Origin: Anaeramoeba ignava BMAN
Lineage: Eukaryota; Protista; Anaeramoebae
NCBI GenBank assembly: GCA_028826165.1
Contig: JAPDFW010000054.1
Span: 496,001-560,000, forward strand
DNA length: 64,000 nucleotides
Direction: 5' to 3'
In this document: positions 3,820-63,902 of the stretch, one piece after another
Layout: every line of letters begins with the position of its first letter
Numbering within the stretch: the first letter of the stretch is position 1
Position numbers and translations under genes: made by a program
The notes under the pieces: model-generated
What the model saw: the letters and a program-made list of their open reading frames with translations, nothing else
Databases searched by the model: none
What the model was told of the DNA's origin: nothing

Positions 3820-5968
3820 AATAATAATTTTATTAATAAATTTAATAATAAATTTAATAATAAATTTAATAATAAATTTAATAATAATTTTAATAATAAT
3901 TTTAATAATAAATTTAATAATAATTTTAATAATAATTTTAATAATAATTTTAATAATAATTTTAATAATAATTTTAATAATAAATTTTAATAATAAATTT
4001 AATAATAATTTTAATAATAATTTTAATAATAAATTTAAATAATAAATTTTAATAATAAATTTAATAAATTTAATAATAATTTTAATAATAATTTAAATAA
4101 TAAATTTTAATAATAAATTTAATTATAATTTTAATTATAATTTTAATAATAAATTTAATAATAATTTTAATAATAATTTTAATAATAATTTTAATTATAA
4201 TTTTAATTATAATTTTAATAATAAATTTAATAATAATTTTAATAATAATTTTAATAATAATTTTAATAATAAATTTAATAATAAATTTAATAATAATTTA
4301 ATAATAATTTTAATAATAAATTTAATAATAAATTTAATAATAATTTTAATAATAATTTTAATAATAAATTTAAATAATAATTTTAATAATAATTTTAATA
4401 ATAATTTTAATAATAAATTTTAATAATAATTTTTAATAATAATTTTAATAATAATTTTAATAATAATTTTAATAATCAATTTTAATAATAAATTTAATAA
4501 TAATTTTAATAATAAATATAATAATAATTTTAATAATAATTTTAATAATAAATTTAATAATAAATTTAATAATAAATTTAATAATAAATTTAATAATAAT
4601 TTTAATAATAAATTTAATAATAATTTTTAATAATAAATTTAATAATAATTTTAATAATAAATTTAATAATAAATTTAATAATAATTTTAATAATAAATTT
4701 TTAATAAATTTAATAATAAATTTAATAATAATTTAATAATAAATTTAATAATAATTTAATAATAAATTTAATAATAATTTTAATAATAATTTTTAATAAT
4801 AATTTTAATAATAATTTTAATAATAATTTTAATAATAATTTTAATAATAATTTTTTTAATAATTTTTTAATAATAAATTTAATAATAATTTTAATAATAA
4901 TTTTAATAATAAATTTTTAATAATAATTTTAATAATAAATTTAATAATAAATTTTAATAATAAATTTAATAATAATTTTAATAATAATTTTAATAATAAA
5001 TTTAATAATAAATTTAATAATAAATTTAATAATAAATTTAATAATAATTTTAATAATAATTTTAATAATAAATTTAATAATAATTTTAATAATAATTTTA
5101 ATAATAATTTTAATAATAATTTTAATAATCAATTTTAATAATAATTTTAATAATAATTTTTAATAAATATAATAATAAATATAATAATAATTTTAATAAT
5201 AAATTTAATAATAAATTTAATAATAAATTTAATAATAAATTTAATAATAATTTTTAATAATAAATTTAATAATAATTTTAATAATAAATTTTAATAATAA
5301 TTTTAATAATAAATTTAATAATAAATTTAATAATAAATTTAATAATAAATTTAATAATAAATTTAATAATAAATTTTAATAATAAATTTAATAATAATTT
5401 TAATACTAATTTTAATAATAATTTTAATAATAAATTTAATAATAAATTTTAATAATAATTTTAATAATAAATTTAATAATAAATTTAATAATAAATTTAA
5501 TAATAAATTTAATAATAAATTTAATAATAATTTTTAATAATAATTTTAATAATAATTTAAATAATAATTTTAATAATAATTTTAATAATAATTTTAATAA
5601 TAAATTTAATAATAAATTTTAATAATAATTTTAATAATAAATTTAATAATAAATTTAATAATAATTTTAATAATAATTTTATTAATAAATTTAATAATAA
5701 TTATAATAATAATTTTAATAATAAATTTAATAATAAATTTTAATAATAATTTTAATAATAATTTTTAATAATAAATTTAATAATAATTTTAATAATAAAT
5801 TTAATAATAATTTTAATAATAATTTTAATAATAAATTTAATAATAAATTTAATAATAAATTTAATAATAATTTTAATAATAATTTTATTAATAAATTTAA
5901 TAATAATTTAAATAATAAATTTAATAATAATATTTAATAATAATTTTAATAATAAATTTAATAAATTT
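3820..5968. repeat. ~2.1 kb almost pure A/T satellite, ~12-bp unit TTAATAATAA(A/T)T
   Basis: Directly visible tandem repeat between TRAPPC8 and DOCK, with only a few C bases. Confidence 0.97.
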
Positions 5969-6244
5969 AAAAAGATCAAATTTAAAAAGATCAAATTTAA
6001 AAAGATCAAATATTTCTCAAAAAAAAAAAACAAAAAATAGAAAATGTGAATTCAACATTTTTTAACAAGAAATTGTTTGTTATTTAAAATTAAAAGTTAA
6101 ATTAAAATTTTATTTTTTTATTATTTTTATTTTTATTATTTAAAAAAAAATTTTTTTTTAATTTTTCTTTTTTATTTGAGAAAAAAAATAAAAATAAAAA
6201 AAATAAAAAATTCATTTTTTTTTTGCTTTTTTTGTTTTAACAAA

Positions 6245-50643: not shown

Positions 50644-52129
50644 TTAAATTAAATTTGATCTTGTTTTTCTTTTTCTTCTTTTCCAAAAAATAATAAAAAT
50701 AATTAAAGAAATTAAAATAAAAATTCCAATTATCAATCCAATTATTAAATATTTTTGAGAATTTGTTTTTGTTGTTTCATCAATATTATTTGAAATGAAG
50801 ATTATTTCAAAAGAATAAACTTTTCCTTGATTTGAACTATTCTCAATTATTGTATAAGGAGAACTAGATAAAAGATAATTTTGAAAAACTACAATTTGAT
50901 ATCCAAATCGATTTTCAGCTTCTCCATCACTTGCAATTAAGATTTGTTTTTCATTCCAATAATTTTCATCTTTTTCGTAAATATAAACTTTTCCTTGATG
51001 TGAATTATTTCCAACATTTGCATAAGAAGCACCAATGAATGAAATATTTCCTGAAATTGATAAACTTGAACTAAAATAATCATCAGATTCTCCATCACTT
51101 GCAATTAAGATTTGTTTTTCATTCCAATAAGTTCCATTATTTTCAAAAATATAAGCTTTTCCTTGATTTGTATTATTTCCCAATTGTTGCATAAAAAGAA
51201 CTAATTAATGAAGTAATTCCTGAAATTTCTAATCTATATCCAAAAGAATCATTTGTTTTTCCTTCACTTGTAATTAATATTTGTTTTTCATTCCAATAAG
51301 TTCCATTATTTTCAAAGAAATAAACTTTTCCTTGTTTTGTATTATTTCCAACTGTTGCATAAGGTGATCCAATTAATGAAATATTTCCTGAAATTGATAA
51401 ACCTAAACCAAAATAATCATCTGCTTTTCCATCACTTGCAATTAATATTTGTTTTTCATTCCAATAAGTTCCATTATTTTCAAAGAAATAAACTTTTCCT
51501 TGCCTTGTATTATTTCCAACTTTTGCATAAGAAGAACTAATTAATGAATAATTTCCTGAAATTAATAAACTTGTTCCAAAATAATCACCTGATTCTCCAT
51601 CACTTGTAATTAATATTTGTTTTTCATTCCAATAAGTTCCATTATTTTCAAAGAAATAAACTTTTCCTTGCCTTGAATTAGCTCCAACTTTTGCATAAGG
51701 AGAACAAATTATTGAATAATTTCCTGAAATTGAAGTATCCAAAGCAAAAATATCATCAGCTTCTCCATCACTTGCAACTAAGATTTGTTTTTCATTCCAA
51801 TAAGTTCCATTATTTTCATAAATATAAGCTTTTCCTTGTGAATCAGTAGTTCCAACTTCTGCATTTGGTGAACCAGTTATTGAAATATTTCCTGAAATTG
51901 ATAAACTTGCTCCAAAATAATCATCTGCTTTTCCATCACTTGCTAATATTATTTTTTCATCTTTTAATAACAACGAACTTCCAAATTCAATTCCACTTTT
52001 AATTAAATCTTCTTCTTTTAATAAAATTTTATCAAATAAATTGGATTTTGAATTTTTTTGGATTTTACAATAAAAAGAATTAAAAAGAATTAATAAAATG
52101 AGATAAAATTGAATTGTTTTTAATTTCAT
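50644..52129 (-). CDS. Type I membrane protein with 7 FG-GAP repeats (beta-propeller), frameshift near 51180
   Basis: Signal peptide, seven 56-aa repeats ASDG..DDYFG.S.SISG....G.P......QGK.Y.FE, a C-terminal TM helix and a basic tail (WKRRKRK). Confidence 0.88.
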
Positions 52130-53214: not shown

Positions 53215-53595
53215 TAAATTTTGATTTTGATTTTGATTTTAATTTTGATTTTGATTTTGATTTTGAATTTGAATTTAAATTTATATTTTGAATTTGAATT
53301 TAAATTTTGATTTTTATTTTGAATTTAAATTTATATTTTGAATTTTAATTTTGATTTTGATTTTATATTTTGATTTTTATTTTTATTTTGAATTTGAATT
53401 TGATTTTGATTTTGATTTTGATTTTGATTTTGATTTTGATTTTGATTTTGATTTTGATTTTGATTTTGATTTTGATTTTGATTTTGATTTTGATTTTGAT
53501 TTTGATTTTGATTTTGATTTTGATTTTGATTTTGAATTTGATTTTGATTTTAAGTTTTGATTTTGATTTTGGTTTTGATTTTGATTTTGATTTTG
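53215..53595. repeat. (GATTTT)n hexamer microsatellite
   Basis: Visible array with the same unit that encodes (NQ)n on the opposite strand elsewhere. Confidence 0.93.
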
Positions 53596-53878
53596 TTTCA
53601 GTTTTTTCCAAGGATTTTTAATAAATTTTAGGAGAATAAAAAGGATAAGGCCAATTTGTAAGTTTTTCCCAAGGATTTTCAATAAATTTAGGAGAATAAT
53701 AAGAATAAGGCCAAATTTTTGGGTTATTTTGAAAAAATTTTTTATTTTTTTGTCGATATCTTTTAAAATTAGAAGAAGACATTTTTAATAAAGAAAAAAA
53801 ATGAAATTTTCATTTTTCATTTTTTCATTTTTTTCATTTTTTCATTTTTTTCATTTTTTCATTTTTCTTTTATTAAAA

Positions 53879-56755
53879 ATGTCACATTTATTTATTTCAG
53901 GAACTTCTTCTTCTTCATTTTTTTTAAAACCTGTTGTTAAATTTTCAGGGAAAAAAAATCAAATTAAAAATATTTCTTGTGGAGGATCTCATACAGCAAT
54001 TTCACTTGAAAATGGAAAAATTATAATTTTTATTCAAAAAAAATTTAGTGAAATGAAAAAAAATATTAAATCAAATCAAGATAATTTTTCTGAAAATTTT
54101 GAAGAGAAAAAATTTAATCAATTTAATGGAAAACAAATTTTAATGTTATCAAGTGGAGCAACTTCACTTCTTGCTCTTGTTGAAGGTTCTGTTTATCTTC
54201 TTGATTTCTCTTTTAATTTTCCAAATAAATTTGAAAAAATTAATTTTGGGAAACAGTTTAAAAAGTATTTATCGAATTGTTGCTGGAAGTAGTTTTTATT
54301 TTGCTTTAGAAAAAAGGTTATTTAAATTAGAATTAGAATTAGAATTTATTTATAAAATTAAAATTAAAATTAAAATTAAAATTAATTTATAAAATTAAAA
54401 TTAAAATTAAAATTAAAATTAAAATTAGAATTAAAATTAAAATTAAAATTAAAATTAAAATTCATTTATAAAATTAAAATTAAAATTAAAATTAAAATTA
54501 AAATTAAAATTAAAATTAAAATTCAAATTAAAATTAAAATTATAAAAATTAAAATTAAAATTAAAATTAAAATTAAAATTAAAATTAAAAATTTATAAAA
54601 TTAAAATTAAAATTAAAATTAAAATTAAAATTCATTTATAAAATTAAAATTAAAATTAAAATTAAAATTAAAATTAAAATTAAAATTAAAATTAAAATTA
54701 AAATTAAAATTAAAATTAAAATTAAAATTAAAATTAAAATTAAAATTAAAATTAAAATTCATTTATAAAATTAAAATTAAAATTAAAATTAAAATTAAAA
54801 TTAAAATTAAAATTAAAATTAAAATTAAAATTAAAATTAAAATTAAAAATTAAAATTAAAATTAAAATTAAAATTAAAATTAAAATTAAAATTAATTTAA
54901 AATTAAAATTAAAATTAAAATTAAAATTTAAAATTAAAATTTAAAATTTAAAATTAATATTAATATTAAAATTAAAATTTATTTATAAAATTAAAATTAA
55001 AATTAAAATTAAAATTCATTTATAAAATTTAAAATTTGAATTTAAAAAAGAGGTCATTTGTTTGCTTGGGGAAATAATAACTGTGGTCAACTTGGAACTG
55101 GAAATCAAGAAGAACAAAAAAATCCAATAGAAATAGAAATTAAAAATGCAGGTCCAATAAGTGAAGTAGCAGCAGGAGGTCAACATTCATTAGTATTAAC
55201 AACTTATTCACAATTATTTTCATGTGGAAAAAATCAATACGGACAATTAGGACATGGAAATAAAAAAGACAAATCAACATTTACTGAAGTATTATTTATT
55301 CCACAAAAAGAAAGAATCAAGTCAATAACTTGTGGAAATGAAATTAGTTTGATTTTAACTGAAAATGGAAAGGTTTTTATTGCAGGAAGAGGAAATGGAA
55401 CTGGATTGGGAAATTTGGAAGATCAACCCATCTTCCAAGAATGTATTTTTGGAAAAAATGTGGAAATCACTCAATTCTCTTCAGGTGGAGCTTATGGACA
55501 AAGTTTTTTTGTTGCAAAAAGTATTTTGTCAAATATTTATGGAGCTGGTGGAAATCAATATTCTCAAATTAAAAATAATCAAGATGAAAAAAGTGAATTG
55601 AGTCCTGTCAGAATTCCTTTTCCTGATGAATTCATACCAATTTCTTTTGCATGCGGTTGGATGCATATTGCATTTATTGCTGAAGAACCTTTAGCATTTC
55701 AAAACAAACCTAAAAACAAAAACAAAAACAAAAACAAAAACAAAAACAAAATGAAAATATAAATGAAAATATAGATGAAAATCAAGAAGAATTTCTTGGA
55801 AATTTTGCTCAATTACCAAATGAAATCATTTTCAAAATTCTTTCCTATCTTGATGCTGAATTTTTGACTAGGATTTCTCGTTGTTCGAAATTATTCAAAG
55901 TTTATGCAAATCAAAATATCTTTTGGAAATCATTATTCAAAAAATTCTGTGGAAAACCAAATCCTTTAGAATTAAAAATTATTGAAAATCCTCAAAATCT
56001 TGATTGCGGTTATTATGAAGCTTGTCTTTTCCGATATAATAACCCAGTTTATTTATCCAATGATGGAAAATACAAAATTTTTAAATGGAAAGCAAAAAAA
56101 GAAGGTCGACTTTTAACATTAGGACTTGATGCAGGTGGAAAAACAACAATGCTTTATAAAATTAAACTATGGTCAAATATAACAACAATTCCAACAATAG
56201 GTATAATTTATAAAATTTTTTATTAAAATAAATTAAATGTGAAAAAAAAGCAAAAAAAAAATGTGGACAATCCAAAAAAAAAAAATTTTTTTTAATTTAT
56301 TTTTAATTTAATTTTTAATTTAATTTTTAATTTAATTTTTAATTTAATTTTTAATTTAATTTTTAATTTAAGGTTTTAATGTTGAAAATTTTCAAGCTTT
56401 TGGATTTGAATTTAATATTTGGGATGTTGGAGTAGCAGATAAAGGAAGACCTCTTTGGAGACATTATTTTCAAGGAACTGATTGCTTAATTTTCCCTATT
56501 GATGCAAATGATGATCAACGTTTTGAAGAAGCTTTAAGTGAAATTTATCGATGTGCTCAAAGTGAACAACTTTCAAATAGTCTTTTTTTATTTCCTTTTA
56601 CAAAAATTGATATTGCAAAAAATTTTTCTTTAATTGAAAGAATTAAACAATTTGATTTTAAAAGAATTCCTCAATATCATAATTTTCTTAATATTTGTAC
56701 ACCTAGAGCTGAAGGACTTTATGAATTAATATTTTGGATTGCAGAACATATTTAA
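53879..56755 (+). CDS. RCC1-repeat + F-box + divergent Arf-like GTPase fusion protein
   Basis: RCC1 repeats ([43 protein letters not shown]), F-box ([39 protein letters not shown]) and Arf ([59 protein letters not shown]). Introns 54317-55050 and 56201-56372. Two single-base frameshifts (~54260, ~55750) lie in or beside A-runs. Confidence 0.8.
54340..55030. repeat. (TTAAAA)n microsatellite filling intron 1 of the RCC1-F-box-Arf gene
   Basis: Visible array inside GT54317..AG55050. Confidence 0.95.
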
Positions 56756-56878
56756 ATTAAATCAAAAATTTAAATCAAAAAAAATTTAAAAAAAGAAACC
56801 GTTAAATAAAATTTCGTTAAAAAATTAATTTAAAATTTTTTTTCATTTTTTTTCATTTTTATTTTTTTTAAAAAAAAA

Positions 56879-60152: not shown

Positions 60153-61978
60153 TTAATTTTTAAATTTTTTAATTAATAAATCAAATAAATTTGGATTTGT
60201 TTGATTTAATTGAAAATAATCAATTCCAGTTTGAATTTCATCAATTATTTCTTTGTGTAATTTCAATTTCATCTTTAATTTGATTTGAATAAATCCAATA
60301 TTCAAATATTTGAAATGATTTATTACTTAATTCACTATAATCTGTAACTTTATTTGAAGTATCTTCAGTAACAGATAAAAACATTCCTCGATATAATTCA
60401 CTTCTCATTATTAATATTAATTTAGGAAATTTATATTGTTTTTCTTTTCTTTCAATTATAAAATCTTTTTCATTTTCATTTTCATTTTCATTTAAATAAA
60501 TTCTTTTCATTGTTTCTTCAATTTTTTCATTTGAATTTATAATTTCTTTAATTTCATAAATATAATTTTGATTTATAATTCTGTTTGAATAAATCATTTC
60601 AAATATTTGATTTGATTCTTTAATTGATTTTTTTGAAATAATTTCTTGAAGTTTTTCAATTTCATTTTGATTTTGATTTAATCTATATTTCAATATTAAT
60701 TTATGAGCTTCAATTATTTCTCCATTTTCGGTTTTAAATGAAATATTGCAAAATTCTTTTCTTTCAAATAATTTTATCAAATCTTCTTCAAGATTGGAAA
60801 AAGGAGGAGGAGAATAATAAAGAAATGATCTTTCATTTCCACAAGAAATATGATAATTAGAAATATTTTCATTAAATCTTAATTTAGGAAGTTCAATTTG
60901 AATTGGAATTGATTTACTTTCTGTATCTCCAGTTCCTAATTGACCATATAAATTATTTCCAAATCCTATTAATTTTGAATTAGAAGTTAAAATCAAAGTA
61001 TGAGAATTTCCACAAGAAAAATCAAGAATATTATCATCATTTTCAAATAAAGATGATTTGATTTCAGTAAATTCATAAGTATTTTCATGGTTTTTATCAA
61101 ATCCAATAAACCTATAAAATCCACATGAATAAAGTTTTCTTTTTGGATTTTCATTTTCATCTTCAATCAACATTATTGAATGAAAATTTCCACATTGAAT
61201 ATCAATTATTTTGCCTTTTGGAATATTTTGGATTTTGGTTAATTTTTGGATTTTTGCTCCAATAAATGAATTTCCCAATCCAAATTGACGATAATTGTTT
61301 CTTCCACAAACAAATAATTCTTGATTTGAATTTAAAAGAAAAACAGAATCTGTAGAATTTCCTGAAAATATTTTAGAAACATTTTTCATCATTAAAATTG
61401 GTTTTTGTGTCTTTTTAAGTTTTTCAGAATCAAAACCAAGTTGACCATATAGATTTGAACCAATTCCATAAGCATTTCTATTTGAAGTTAATAAGTAAAT
61501 TGATTCAGAGCCAGAAACAATATCTTGAATTATTCTATCATTTTTATCTTCAATTAATGATGAAATATTGATAAATTCATTTGGATTATTTGAATTAATA
61601 TCATATCCTTTGGAAAATGCATTTCCTTCTATTGTTAAAATAGCTTCATTTCCATCACCAACAGTTACTTTTTGAATATTTTCTTCAATTTGGATTTTTG
61701 AAGGATTTTGTTTTGAATCTTCTTTATTTAAATATTCTATTGCTTTTCCATTTGTAAAAAGGAAAATTGTTGAAAATTGACTTGATGAAATTTGTTTAAT
61801 TTGTTTTTCATTTTCATTTTCATTTTCATTTTCATTTTCATTTTCATTTTCATTTTCATTTTCATTTTTAAATTTAAATTGAATTGGTTTTGGTTTCTTC
61901 AAAAATAAAATTTCTATTTGGCTCATTTTTTAAAAGTTTTGGGTTTTCATTTAAACCAAAAAATAAACAATCATTCAT
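60153..61978 (-). CDS. RCC1-repeat propeller + tandem BTB protein, frameshifts near 61895 and 60252
   Basis: The start MNDCLFFG at 61978 matches the neighbouring copy, and RCC1 and BTB motifs match the other paralogues. Confidence 0.87.
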
Positions 61979-62115: not shown

Positions 62116-63902
62116 TTAATTTTGATTATTAAATTTGTTAATTAATAAATCAAATAAATTTGGATTTGTTTGATTTAATTGAAAATAATCAATTCCTATT
62201 TCCAATTCATCAATTATTTCTTGTGTAATTTCAATTTCTTTTTTAATTTGATTTGAATAAATCCAATATTCAAATATTTGAAATGATTTATTATTTAATT
62301 CACTATAATCTCTAACTTTATTAGAAGTATCATTTCAGTAACAGATAAAAACATTCCTCGATATAATTCACTTCTCATTATTAATATTAATTTAGGAAAT
62401 TTATATTGTTTTTCTTTTCTTTCAATTATAAAATCTTTTTCATTTTCATTTTCATTTAAATAAATTCTTTTCATTGTTTCTTCAATTTTTTCATTTGAAT
62501 TTATAATTTCTTTAATTTCAGAATATAATTTTGGATTTATTTTGGAATTGTTTGAATAAATCATTTCAAATATTTGATTTGATTCTTTAATTGATTTTTT
62601 TGAAATAATTTCTTGAAGTTTTTCAATTTGATTTTCATCTTTTAATCTATATTTCAATATTAATTTATGAGCTTTAATTATTTCTCCATTTTTGGTTTTA
62701 AATGAAATATCACAAAATTCTTTTCTTCTAAATAGTTTTATCAAATCTTCTTCAAGATTGGAAAAAGGAGGAGGAGAATAATAAAGAAATGAATTTTGAA
62801 AACCACAAGAAATATGATAATTGGAAATATCTTCATTAAATCTTAATTTAGGAAGTTCAATTTGAATTGGAATTAATTGATTTTTTGTATCTCCAGTTCC
62901 TAATTGACCATTATAATTATTTCCAAATACTATTAACTTTGAATTAGATGTTAAAATCAAAGTATGAGAATTTCCACAAGAAAATTTAAGAATATAATCA
63001 TCATTTTCAAATAAAGATGATTTGATTTCAGTAAATTCATAAATATCTTCATCTTTTCCATTATTTTTGAAATGACCAGTTGAATAAAGTTTTCTTTTTG
63101 GATTTTCATTTTCATCTTCAATCAACATTATTGAATGATAACTTCCACATTGAATATCAATTATTTTGCCTTTTGGAATATTTTGGATTTTGGTTAATTT
63201 TTGGATTTCTTCTTCTATTGCCAAATCGATATCTCCTAATCCAAGTTGACCCCAATAATGATCTCCGCAACAAAATAATTCTTGATTTGAATTTAAAAGA
63301 AAAACAGAATCTGTAGAATTTCCTGAAAATATTTTAGAAACATTTTTCATCATTAAAATTGGTTTTTGTGTTTTTTTAAGTGTTTCAGAATCAAAACCAA
63401 GTTGACTAAATTGATTTGAACCAATTCCATAAGCATTTCTATTTGAAGTTAATAAGTAAATTGATTCAGAGCCAGAAACAATATCTTGAATTATTCTATC
63501 ATTTTTATCTTCAATTAATGATGAAATATTGATAAATTCTTTTGTATTTTTTGAATTAATATCTTCTCCTTTGGAAAATACATTTCCTTCTTTTGTTAAA
63601 ATAGCTTCATTTCCATGACCAACAGTTACTTTTTGAATATTTTCAATTTGGATTTTTGAAGGATTTTGTTTTGAATCTTTTAAATATTCTATTGCTTTTC
63701 CATTTTCAAAAAGGAAAATTGTTGAAAATCTTCCTGATGAAATTTGTTTAATTTGTTTTTCATTTTCATTTTCATTTTCATTTTCATTTTCATTTTCATT
63801 TTCATTTTTAAATTTAAATTGAATTGGTCTTATTATTCTATTTGGCTCATTTTTTAAAAGTTTTGGATTTTGATTTAAACCAAAAAATAAACAATCATTC
63901 AT
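62116..63902 (-). CDS. RCC1-repeat propeller + tandem BTB protein, frameshift near 62333
   Basis: 535-aa ORF plus the conserved C-terminus (FEYWIYSNQIK..NPNLFDLLINKFNNQN) in the shifted frame. Confidence 0.88.

What the first reader, a model, noticed from the sequence alone, without database searches (positions are those of the whole stretch)
53879..56755. RCC1-propeller / F-box / Arf-GTPase triple fusion: candidate undescribed SCF adaptor
Seen: manual splicing gives RCC1 repeats, a KN/EN linker, an F-box (~55810-55940) and a complete Arf-like G domain. The last exon (56373-56755) is missing from the ORF track. The F-box-Arf frame has no ATG of its own before the P-loop, and adding one A at ~55750 fuses it to the RCC1 frame. 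The PTIG/FNVE intron sits at the position also used in animal ARF1 genes, suggesting capture of a genomic Arf gene. Known: F-boxes recruit Skp1-Cullin1, RCC1 propellers bind small GTPases or other substrates, and Arf-E3 ligase fusions exist (TRIM23/ARD1). I do not recognise this three-part order with a central F-box. Inference: a ubiquitin-ligase adaptor linking membrane traffic to SCF degradation.
Basis: partly seen in the sequence, partly recalled or inferred. Interest (0 to 1): 0.85.

Follow-up and report, generated by a model that had tools for sequence, protein, structure and literature searches.

The report
RCC1–F-box–Arf fusion gene copy
This is one, possibly broken, copy of a multi-copy Anaeramoeba ignava gene that joins an RCC1 propeller, an F-box and an Arf GTPase domain lacking its catalytic glutamine. 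The fusion is real, but it is already annotated and was catalogued in other protists, so it is an untested member of a known kind.

Summary
Pfam finds RCC1 repeats, an F-box and an Arf domain in a row on the + strand. The last exon has no start codon of its own. Two frame breaks sit in A-runs at 54260-54264 and 55748-55751.

The window is Anaeramoeba ignava contig C55. GenBank model KAJ5078361.1 (607 aa) already joins the three domains, bridging both breaks with invented introns.

The fusion is real. At least seven paralogues exist in the same genome. Three of those inspected carry RCC1, linker, F-box and Arf N-terminus in one uninterrupted ORF, with the same PTxG|FNVE intron.

The architecture is not new:
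- Homologues occur in A. flamelloides, six amoebozoan genera and a Picozoa data set.
- Vargová et al. 2021 list a Thecamonas ARF protein with "Kelch repeats, RCC, F-box" and comment on F-box/BTB–ARF fusions.

Every RCC1–F-box–Arf member I looked at lacks the catalytic Gln. The window copy is the most degenerate (DVGVADK, TKID).

The SCF-adaptor role is inferred, not tested. First readers of this scan noted paralogues on other pieces of this genome.

The parts
53879..54316 (+). Exon 1: start codon and first RCC1 blades (MSHLFISGT...ALEK), ending with 2 bases of an Arg codon
   Evidence: Translation. The N-terminus matches the paralogues (MNIFICGSN, MKSVFVCGTN) in the alignment. Weak RCC1 hits.
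54260..54264 (+). Frame break 1: an A5 run. The downstream frame is +1, so the assembly has one base too many (or two too few) for an open frame.
   Evidence: Both sides align to the paralogues (FGKQFK / [17 protein letters not shown]).
54317..55050 (+). Intron 1 (GT..AG, 734 nt), almost wholly an (AAAATT)n array
   Evidence: The paralogues have an intron at the same place (..DSK|GNLYSWG).
55051..55690 (+). Exon 2, first part: RCC1 blades ending in the family motif CGWMHIAF
   Evidence: RCC1 E 1e-34; WD40_RLD E 1e-36. Alignment.
55691..55803 (+). Low-complexity linker: (KN)n from (AAAAAC)n, then [14 protein letters not shown]
55748..55751 (+). Frame break 2: an A4 run at the end of the (AAAAAC)n array. 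The assembly lacks one base for an open frame, and TAA follows at 55760-55762 in the upstream frame.
   Evidence: The paralogues read straight through this region.
55804..55941 (+). F-box ([42 protein letters not shown])
   Evidence: PF12937 E 1.9e-10 and PF00646 E 4.9e-8, both above their cut-offs.
55942..56088 (+). Conserved linker with a basic segment ([13 protein letters not shown]) just before the G domain, where Arf proteins have their N-terminal amphipathic helix
   Evidence: Alignment. The helix reading is inference. The AF2 model of paralogue P0006 shows only short, low-confidence helices there.
56089..56200 (+). Arf domain, N-terminal part: P-loop GLDAGGKT and switch I TTIPTIG. The exon ends after the first base of the Gly codon.
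   Evidence: PF00025 positions 10-47. (donor G|GTATAA).
56201..56372 (+). Intron 2 (phase 1, GT..AG, 172 nt).
   Evidence: Same position and phase in paralogues L002-L006 and in the stand-alone Arf gene L009; the L007 acceptor fits too.
56373..56755 (+). Exon 3: the rest of the Arf domain (FNVE...WDVGVADK...TKID...[10 protein letters not shown]...), stop TAA at 56753-56755
   Evidence: PF00025 positions 48-173, E 1.2e-22.

Best explanation
**Shown.** The stretch is a three-exon gene of Anaeramoeba ignava. If both breaks are errors it has 656 codons. It belongs to an old eukaryotic family with a fixed order: RCC1-like propeller, F-box, conserved linker, Arf1-like GTPase domain. The family is expanded to at least eight loci in this genome. 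This copy is the most divergent Anaeramoeba copy in the tree.

**Inferred mechanism.**
- The F-box docks the protein on Skp1 (a single Skp1 gene is present), so the protein acts as a substrate receptor of an SCF-type ligase.
- The propeller is the likeliest target-binding face.
- The Arf domain has lost the catalytic glutamine in every RCC1-F-box-Arf member inspected. It therefore cannot be switched off by GAP-stimulated hydrolysis in the normal way. It most likely serves as a permanent, or only exchange-regulated, membrane or effector anchor that places the ligase on an endomembrane.
- In the window copy the G3 glycine and the NKxD asparagine are also changed. Here the domain may bind nucleotide poorly and act as a pseudo-GTPase.

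**Open.** The two frame breaks, both in A-runs in or beside microsatellites, are either leftover errors of a Nanopore R9 assembly or very recent decay of this copy. I lean slightly to error.
For: - **Domains:**
- **Identity of organism and public model:** (P0001 = KAJ5078361.1, 607 aa, contig of 669,525 bases; the window is C55:496001-560000).
- **Fusion in one ORF in paralogues:**
- **Same exon plan and same phase-1 intron:**
- **Homology across F-box, linker and Arf to amoebozoan proteins:** (P0020 E 8e-9 over query 28-163; P0024 E 1e-8). Names.
- **Anaeramoeba copies form one clade:** support 100/99; the window copy has a long branch of 1.68.
- **G3 Gln replaced in all RCC1-F-box-Arf members seen:** P or E outside Anaeramoeba; S, A or G inside.
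- **Skp1 present:**
- **AF2 model of paralogue P0006:** confident propeller at 1-400, helical F-box region at 445-500, Arf fold at 550-720, mean pLDDT 78.
- **Assembly method:** Nanopore R9, ABruijn, Racon, Nanopolish and two Pilon rounds. Another copy, L005, differs from its 96% identical twin L003 by three homopolymer indels in coding sequence.
- **No stop codon inside any of the five frame segments** (126 + 19 + 232 + 150 + 126 codons) despite about 20% GC.
Against: - No expression or read evidence was obtained. Read laying gave nothing, and no transcript-derived protein of this gene is in the protein collection.
- Six of eight loci have no frame break in the same assembly, so two breaks in one gene is more than an even error rate would give.
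- This copy also has the most degenerate G motifs, a shortened N-terminal propeller part and the longest branch. All of these fit relaxed constraint.
- Skp1 binding, nucleotide binding and membrane association are all untested.
- The basic segment before the G domain is read as a helix by analogy only.
Confidence: 0.55

Rival explanations
1. This copy is a recently dead pseudogene of the family. The two frameshifts are real, and the locus makes at most a truncated RCC1 fragment.
For: - There are two frame breaks in under 2 kb, while six paralogous loci have none.
- It has the most degenerate G motifs (DVGVADK, TKID) and the longest Anaeramoeba branch.
- About 15 residues are missing from the first blade region relative to the paralogues.
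- No transcript-derived protein was found.
Against: - There are no in-frame stops in about 650 codons of a 20% GC sequence. Decay would therefore have to be very recent.
- Both breaks are single-base length changes of A-runs lying in or 60 bases from microsatellite arrays, where short-read polishing of a Nanopore R9 assembly is weakest.
- A similar cluster of homopolymer indels is seen in L005, near a contig end.
Confidence: 0.4
2. These are two separate genes: an RCC1 protein ending at TAA 55760, and an independent F-box-Arf protein.
For: The stop at 55760-55762 in the RCC1 frame. F-box-Arf proteins without RCC1 exist elsewhere (P0009 and P0041; the Physarum 'F-box' entry).
Against: - There is no ATG in the F-box frame before the P-loop.
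- That frame opens only 36 bases before the break.
- The paralogues inspected read through in one ORF.
- There is no room for a promoter or a 5' exon.
Confidence: 0.03
3. The propeller acts on the protein's own Arf domain, as RCC1 acts on Ran or as reported for HERC1 RLD1 on ARF1. It would load or hold the nucleotide state in cis. The F-box would then couple that state to Skp1, either for self-degradation or in a cullin-free Skp1 complex such as the one yeast Rcy1 forms in endosome recycling (from general knowledge).
For: RCC1-like domains are known GTPase binders. The three domains keep a fixed order and a conserved linker across supergroups, which suggests they work together.
Against: - The complex prediction of propeller against Arf domain of P0006 gave no verdict (score 0.01). 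That counts neither way.
- No covariation or interface evidence was obtained.
- Loss of the catalytic Gln makes a classical on/off cycle less likely.
Confidence: 0.15

Closest known systems
TtrArlX1 of Thecamonas trahens (XP_013756981.1) and the other unclassified F-box-bearing ARF proteins in Vargová et al. 2021, Genome Biol Evol 13:evab157 (PMC8358228), Supplementary Table 1
   Same: The ARF-family domain is preceded by RCC1 repeats and an F-box. The authors read such fusions as recruitment of ARF members into ubiquitin circuits. Proteins of the same order and clear sequence homology were found here in Pelomyxa, Mastigamoeba, Soliformovum and others.
   Different: The Thecamonas, Soliformovum and one Logan protein carry extra N-terminal Kelch repeats; the Anaeramoeba copies do not. 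Anaeramoeba was not in that survey. No member has been studied experimentally. I could not read the G3 motif of TtrArlX1 because its sequence is cut in the stored file.
TRIM23 / ARD1 (animal E3 ligase with a C-terminal Arf domain)
   Same: Ubiquitin-ligase machinery sits N-terminal and an Arf1-derived G domain C-terminal in one chain. Vargová et al. cite it as the parallel.
   Different: TRIM23 has RING, B-boxes and a coiled coil and is itself the E3. Here there is only an F-box, which needs Skp1, cullin and Rbx. TRIM23 is holozoan-specific, has no propeller, and arose independently.
HERC1 (RCC1-like domains plus HECT ligase; reported to bind ARF1)
   Same: It combines an RCC1-like propeller with ubiquitin-ligase function and has a link to Arf and membrane traffic (general knowledge; abstract of PMC2791161).
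   Different: In HERC1 the Arf is a separate protein and the ligase domain is HECT. It is a giant protein with no sequence kinship beyond the RCC1 repeats.
RCC1-plus-adaptor proteins: RCBTB1/2 (RCC1 + BTB, Cul3 adaptors) and FBXO24 (F-box + RCC1 repeats; from memory)
   Same: An RCC1 propeller serves as the presumed substrate-binding part of a cullin-RING adaptor. RCC1-BTB genes lie 3.5 kb downstream in this window.
   Different: They have no Arf domain. In FBXO24 the F-box is N-terminal to the propeller; here it lies between propeller and GTPase.

Membership tests
RCC1–F-box–Arf family (unclassified 'ArlX' multidomain ARF proteins of Vargová et al. 2021) | Domain order RCC1-like propeller, F-box, Arf domain in one polypeptide | tested here: met
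   for the window pieces. The order is continuous in one ORF in paralogues L002-L004. In the window it is interrupted by two single-base frame breaks.
RCC1–F-box–Arf family (unclassified 'ArlX' multidomain ARF proteins of Vargová et al. 2021) | Sequence homology across the F-box, linker and Arf N-terminus, not only shared Pfam domains | tested here: met
   the window piece 55714-56202 matches Mastigamoeba P0020 (E 8e-9, query 28-163) and Soliformovum P0024 (E 1e-8, query 27-163). The alignment shows shared motifs CGWxH[ST], LGxFxxLP and the WK..Y linker.
RCC1–F-box–Arf family (unclassified 'ArlX' multidomain ARF proteins of Vargová et al. 2021) | Groups with the family in a tree | tested here: met
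   the Anaeramoeba copies form a clade with support 100/99 and the window copy lies inside it. No outgroup of stand-alone Arf or RCC1 proteins was included, so the single origin of the fusion rests on the linker homology.
F-box protein / SCF substrate receptor | F-box motif above the curated Pfam threshold | tested here: met
   PF12937 at 40.8 bits (cut-off 24.3) and PF00646 at 33 bits (cut-off 20.5).
F-box protein / SCF substrate receptor | Skp1 partner present in the genome | tested here: met
   one Skp1 match at C55:287920-288021 (62.9 bits, over the cut-off). Cullin and Rbx1 were not searched.
F-box protein / SCF substrate receptor | Binds Skp1 and assembles with a cullin | not testable with these tools
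   The Skp1 gene is split into several exons and shows an in-frame TAA in the assembly. No referenced continuous Skp1 chain was available for a complex prediction.
ARF family GTPase | P-loop GxxxxGK[ST] and switch I Thr (TTIPTIGFNVE) | tested here: met
   GLDAGGKT and TTIPTIG|FNVE.
ARF family GTPase | G3 motif WDxGGQ with catalytic Gln (Q71 of Arf1) | tested here: not met
   The window reads WDVGVADK. The paralogues read WDVGGSYN, WDVGGADR and WDIGGGSM. Amoebozoan members read WDVGGPDK or WDVGGEDK. The stand-alone Arf1 of the same genome has WDVGGQER.
ARF family GTPase | G4 motif NKxD for guanine specificity | tested here: not met
   The window reads TKID. The paralogues read HKQD, SKQD, TKLD and NKQE. 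Non-Anaeramoeba members keep NKQD.
ARF family GTPase | N-terminal myristoylated amphipathic helix (Gly2) | tested here: not met
   The G domain is internal, with no free N-terminus. A basic, partly hydrophobic segment occupies the equivalent place, and its function is unknown.
RCC1-like domain (seven-bladed propeller) | Seven RCC1 blades forming a closed propeller | tested here: inconclusive
   There are strong repeats in exon 2 (three Pfam RCC1 stretches; WD40_RLD profile positions 50-263 of 363) and weak ones in exon 1. The AF2 model of paralogue P0006 gives a confident all-beta domain at 1-400. The window copy was not folded because it is broken, and it lacks about 15 residues in the first blade.

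The most novel reading that the evidence does not exclude
The RCC1–F-box–Arf proteins form one ancient eukaryotic family, seen in Metamonada, Amoebozoa, Apusomonadida and possibly Picozoa and Euglenozoa. Its defining trait would be an Arf1-derived domain that lost its catalytic glutamine early. The family would then be a hydrolysis-dead, membrane-addressed SCF receptor present in early eukaryotes and lost from all model organisms. The eight-locus expansion in Anaeramoeba would tie in with that lineage's enlarged endomembrane and symbiosome traffic machinery.
Probability: 0.25. Interest if true: 0.55.

Novelty: new member of a known kind. Interest (0 to 1): 0.3.

Why it matters
For this locus, little. 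The gene is already in GenBank with all three domains, and the architecture is in a published survey of ARF proteins.

The family as a whole is more interesting. It couples an Arf domain that seems unable to hydrolyse GTP in the usual way to cullin-RING ubiquitination. It is spread over distant protist groups, is absent from model organisms, and has never been tested. An intact paralogue such as KAJ5075561.1 would be a better subject than this copy.

The case also shows that gene models in this Nanopore-based assembly bridge homopolymer frame breaks with invented introns, which drops real protein segments.

Tried and rejected
**Reads.**
- The counted call on 55046-56800 was stopped by a filter on places 56283-56372.
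- No read evidence exists for either frame break.
- One local script printed the 14 bases before exon 3 to read the splice acceptor.
- The look-up of sequencing runs shows only that the stretch is held by runs of two studies of the same organism.

**Protein searches for read-through evidence.** I looked for a transcript- or read-derived ORF that reads through the breaks.
- The exon 2 RCC1 ORF gave only distant RCC1 proteins.
- The F-box/Arf piece gave nothing in its length range.
- Residues 330-607 of the public model gave no second near-identical protein.

These blanks are limited by the length windows of the tool.

**Complex prediction.** Propeller against Arf domain of paralogue P0006 gave no verdict (score 0.01). 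It is not evidence either way. An F-box–Skp1 prediction was not run, because no continuous referenced Skp1 chain was available.

**Joined model.** I did not search or fold a joined spliced model of the window gene. Pieces were searched exon by exon by reference. Where one chain was needed, I used the public model P0001 and the intact paralogue P0006.

**Not tested or not found.**
- The claim about animal ARF1 intron positions was not tested.
- No tree with stand-alone Arf outgroups was built, because I held no referenced set of them.
- Literature searches for a functional study of this architecture found none.

**Rejected.** The two-gene reading (no start codon; paralogues are continuous) and a ciliate-type genetic code (the stops sit in shifted frames, not in frame).
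Full report
**What is there.** The window is very AT-rich, about 20% GC, and belongs to Anaeramoeba ignava. The F-box/Arf piece matches GenBank protein KAJ5078361.1 at 99% (P0001, 607 aa, 'regulator of chromosome condensation', contig of 669,525 bases). The window is C55:496001-560000 of a 42.8 Mb assembly in 147 contigs.

Pfam, searched exon by exon, confirms all three domains:
- RCC1 repeats: E 1e-34 for 55052-55759, weak for 53879-54256.
- An F-box at 55804-55941: PF12937, E 1.9e-10, above its cut-off.
- An Arf domain split exactly between profile positions 47 and 48: E 1.2e-8 for the piece ending at 56202, and E 1.2e-22 for 56375-56755.

**Gene model.**
- Exon 1: 53879-54316.
- Intron 1: 54317-55050, GT..AG, almost pure (AAAATT)n.
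- Exon 2: 55051-56200.
- Intron 2: 56201-56372, phase 1, inside the Gly codon of PTIG|FNVE.
- Exon 3: 56373-56755, ending in TAA.

Exon 3 has no ATG, GTG or TTG in frame, which is why it is missing from the ORF list. The F-box frame has no ATG before the P-loop.

**The two frame breaks.**
- Break 1 lies in the A5 run at 54260-54264. The frame that continues the RCC1 blade ([17 protein letters not shown]) is +1, so the assembly has one base too many or two too few.
- Break 2 lies in the A4 run at 55748-55751, at the end of an (AAAAAC)n array. Here the assembly is one base short, and TAA follows at 55760.

With both corrected, the reading frame has 657 codons including the stop. The public model does not correct the breaks. 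It bridges them with invented introns. This drops the blade piece after break 1, adds the out-of-frame 'YLSNCCWK', and drops [12 protein letters not shown] plus the linker before the F-box (one search compared).

**Is the fusion real?** Yes. Searching the whole genome with the F-box/Arf piece finds seven further loci that cover it from the F-box to PTIG. In L002, L003 and L004, RCC1 blades, linker, F-box and the Arf N-terminus form one ORF of 348-369 aa, followed by an Arf C-terminal exon. Mapping intact paralogue proteins on all eight loci shows no frame break in six of them.

The exon plan is the same. The phase-1 intron at PTxG|FNVE is present in the window copy and in L002-L006; the L007 acceptor fits too. 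L008 lacks it. It is also present in a stand-alone Arf gene of the same genome (L009), while another Arf1 gene (L010) has no intron. The fusion itself, however, is far older than this locus.

**Is it undescribed?** No. Full-length homologues with the same order come from:
- A. flamelloides;
- Pelomyxa schiedti (at least four), Mastigamoeba balamuthi and Soliformovum irregulare (with extra Kelch repeats);
- Pyxidicula operculata, Copromyxa protea and Amoeba proteus;
- a Picozoa single-cell assembly and unnamed metagenome contigs.

The match extends through the F-box and linker, not only the Arf part.

Vargová et al. 2021 (PMC8358228) counted 75 multidomain ARF proteins. [quoted passage not shown] Their Supplementary Table 1 lists TtrArlX1 of Thecamonas trahens with 'Kelch repeats, RCC, F-box'. 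It also has a Physarum entry marked 'F-box' and a Euglena entry marked 'RCC1'. I found no functional study. Neither the Anaeramoeba genome paper nor a 2025 preprint on ARF genes that includes Anaeramoeba mentions the fusion.

**State of the GTPase.** In the alignment and in further members, every protein with RCC1, F-box and Arf lacks the catalytic glutamine of WDVGGQ:
- Pro or Glu in the amoebozoan and Picozoa proteins, whose Arf domains are otherwise close to Arf1.
- Ser, Ala or Gly in Anaeramoeba.

A metagenomic fragment whose held part shows only F-box and Arf (P0041) keeps Gln, as does the stand-alone Arf1 of A. ignava.

The window copy goes further. It reads DVGVADK (the Gly that contacts the gamma-phosphate is also gone), TKID for NKxD, and CTPRAEG for CATSGDG. 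So 'complete G domain' holds for length but not for function. This agrees with another first-reader note on the same stretch (s1-698405).

**Tree and structure.** The Anaeramoeba copies form one clade (100/99). The window copy has the longest Anaeramoeba branch at 1.68, partly inflated by the flawed public model used for it. An AlphaFold2 model of the intact paralogue P0006 has mean pLDDT 78. It shows a confident beta domain at 1-400, a long helix at 416-442, F-box helices up to about residue 500, and an Arf fold at 550-720 with weak switch regions.

**Intact or dead?** Undecided.

For assembly error:
- The assembly is Nanopore R9 with ABruijn, Racon, Nanopolish and only two Pilon rounds.
- Both breaks are single-base length changes of A-runs in or next to microsatellites.
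- L005, a 96% DNA copy of L003 near a contig end, shows three homopolymer indels in coding sequence.
- None of the five frame segments contains a stop, despite the base composition.

For real decay:
- Six other loci are clean.
- This copy is the most degenerate.
- No transcript-derived protein was found.

Read evidence could not be obtained. I put an intact gene at about 0.55-0.6.

**Mechanism.** What is shown: three folded modules in a fixed order, an F-box above threshold, a Skp1 gene in the genome, and family-wide loss of the catalytic Gln.

What is inferred:
- The protein is a Skp1-bound substrate receptor.
- The propeller binds targets.
- The Arf domain is a hydrolysis-deficient module that holds the ligase on a membrane or on Arf effectors. 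In this copy it is perhaps nucleotide-blind.

A cis action of the propeller on the Arf domain is a rival reading; the one complex prediction gave no verdict.

**Limits.**
- I neither searched nor folded a joined spliced model of the window gene.
- The comparison with animal ARF1 introns was not made.

First readers of this scan noted the same architecture on other pieces of this genome. I confirmed that such paralogues exist, but I did not check those notes one by one.

Noticed in passing
window 60241-61926 (-) and 62295-63902 (-); also L004:423-875 (+): Two tandem genes for RCC1-repeat plus BTB-like proteins (RCBTB-like, presumed Cul3 adaptors) lie 3.5 kb downstream of the finding. A closely similar C-terminal ORF lies next to paralogue L004, so the RCC1-F-box-Arf and RCC1-BTB genes may have been duplicated together.
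   Followed up: no
L011:1345-1425 (G000 C55, about 287.8 kb): The only Skp1 match in the genome is a multi-exon gene. One exon reads AANFLDIKSLLDVTL*KTVANMIK, with an in-frame TAA where Skp1 proteins have Cys-Lys. This is either an assembly error in an essential gene or an oddity worth checking with reads.
   Followed up: partly
L005 (G000 C46:1859-5317) against L003 (C126:17328-20786): The two copies of one family member are 96% identical over 3.3 kb. The copy near the contig end differs in exon 2 by three homopolymer indels (-1, +1, +2). The public model P0002 translates the shifted stretch as SFWSIRNWNLKFKNQIE.
   Followed up: partly
L008 (G000 C59:104217-107693): This paralogue (gene of P0043/P0152) lacks the PTxG|FNVE intron shared by the other copies. 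It seems to have an intron just after WDIGGG instead.
   Followed up: no
window 4001-6000: A 2 kb bin has a GC fraction of 0.004, so it is almost pure A+T, presumably a microsatellite array. Long arrays also fill intron 1 ((AAAATT)n, 54330-55045) and the upstream spacer ((GATTTT)n, 53350-53600).
   Followed up: no
window 50644-52129 (-): Two adjoining ORFs carry many copies of a repeat of about 45 residues (GKVYFFENNGTYWNEKQILIASDG...) and end in a transmembrane segment. They look like one FG-GAP/beta-propeller-like surface protein, split by a frame break or an intron.
   Followed up: no
tree (P0029, Picozoa sp. SAG31): The Picozoa family member nests among tubulinean amoebae (Copromyxa, Amoeba proteus, Pyxidicula) on a long branch. 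This could reflect contamination of the single-cell assembly, lateral transfer or a long-branch effect.
   Followed up: no
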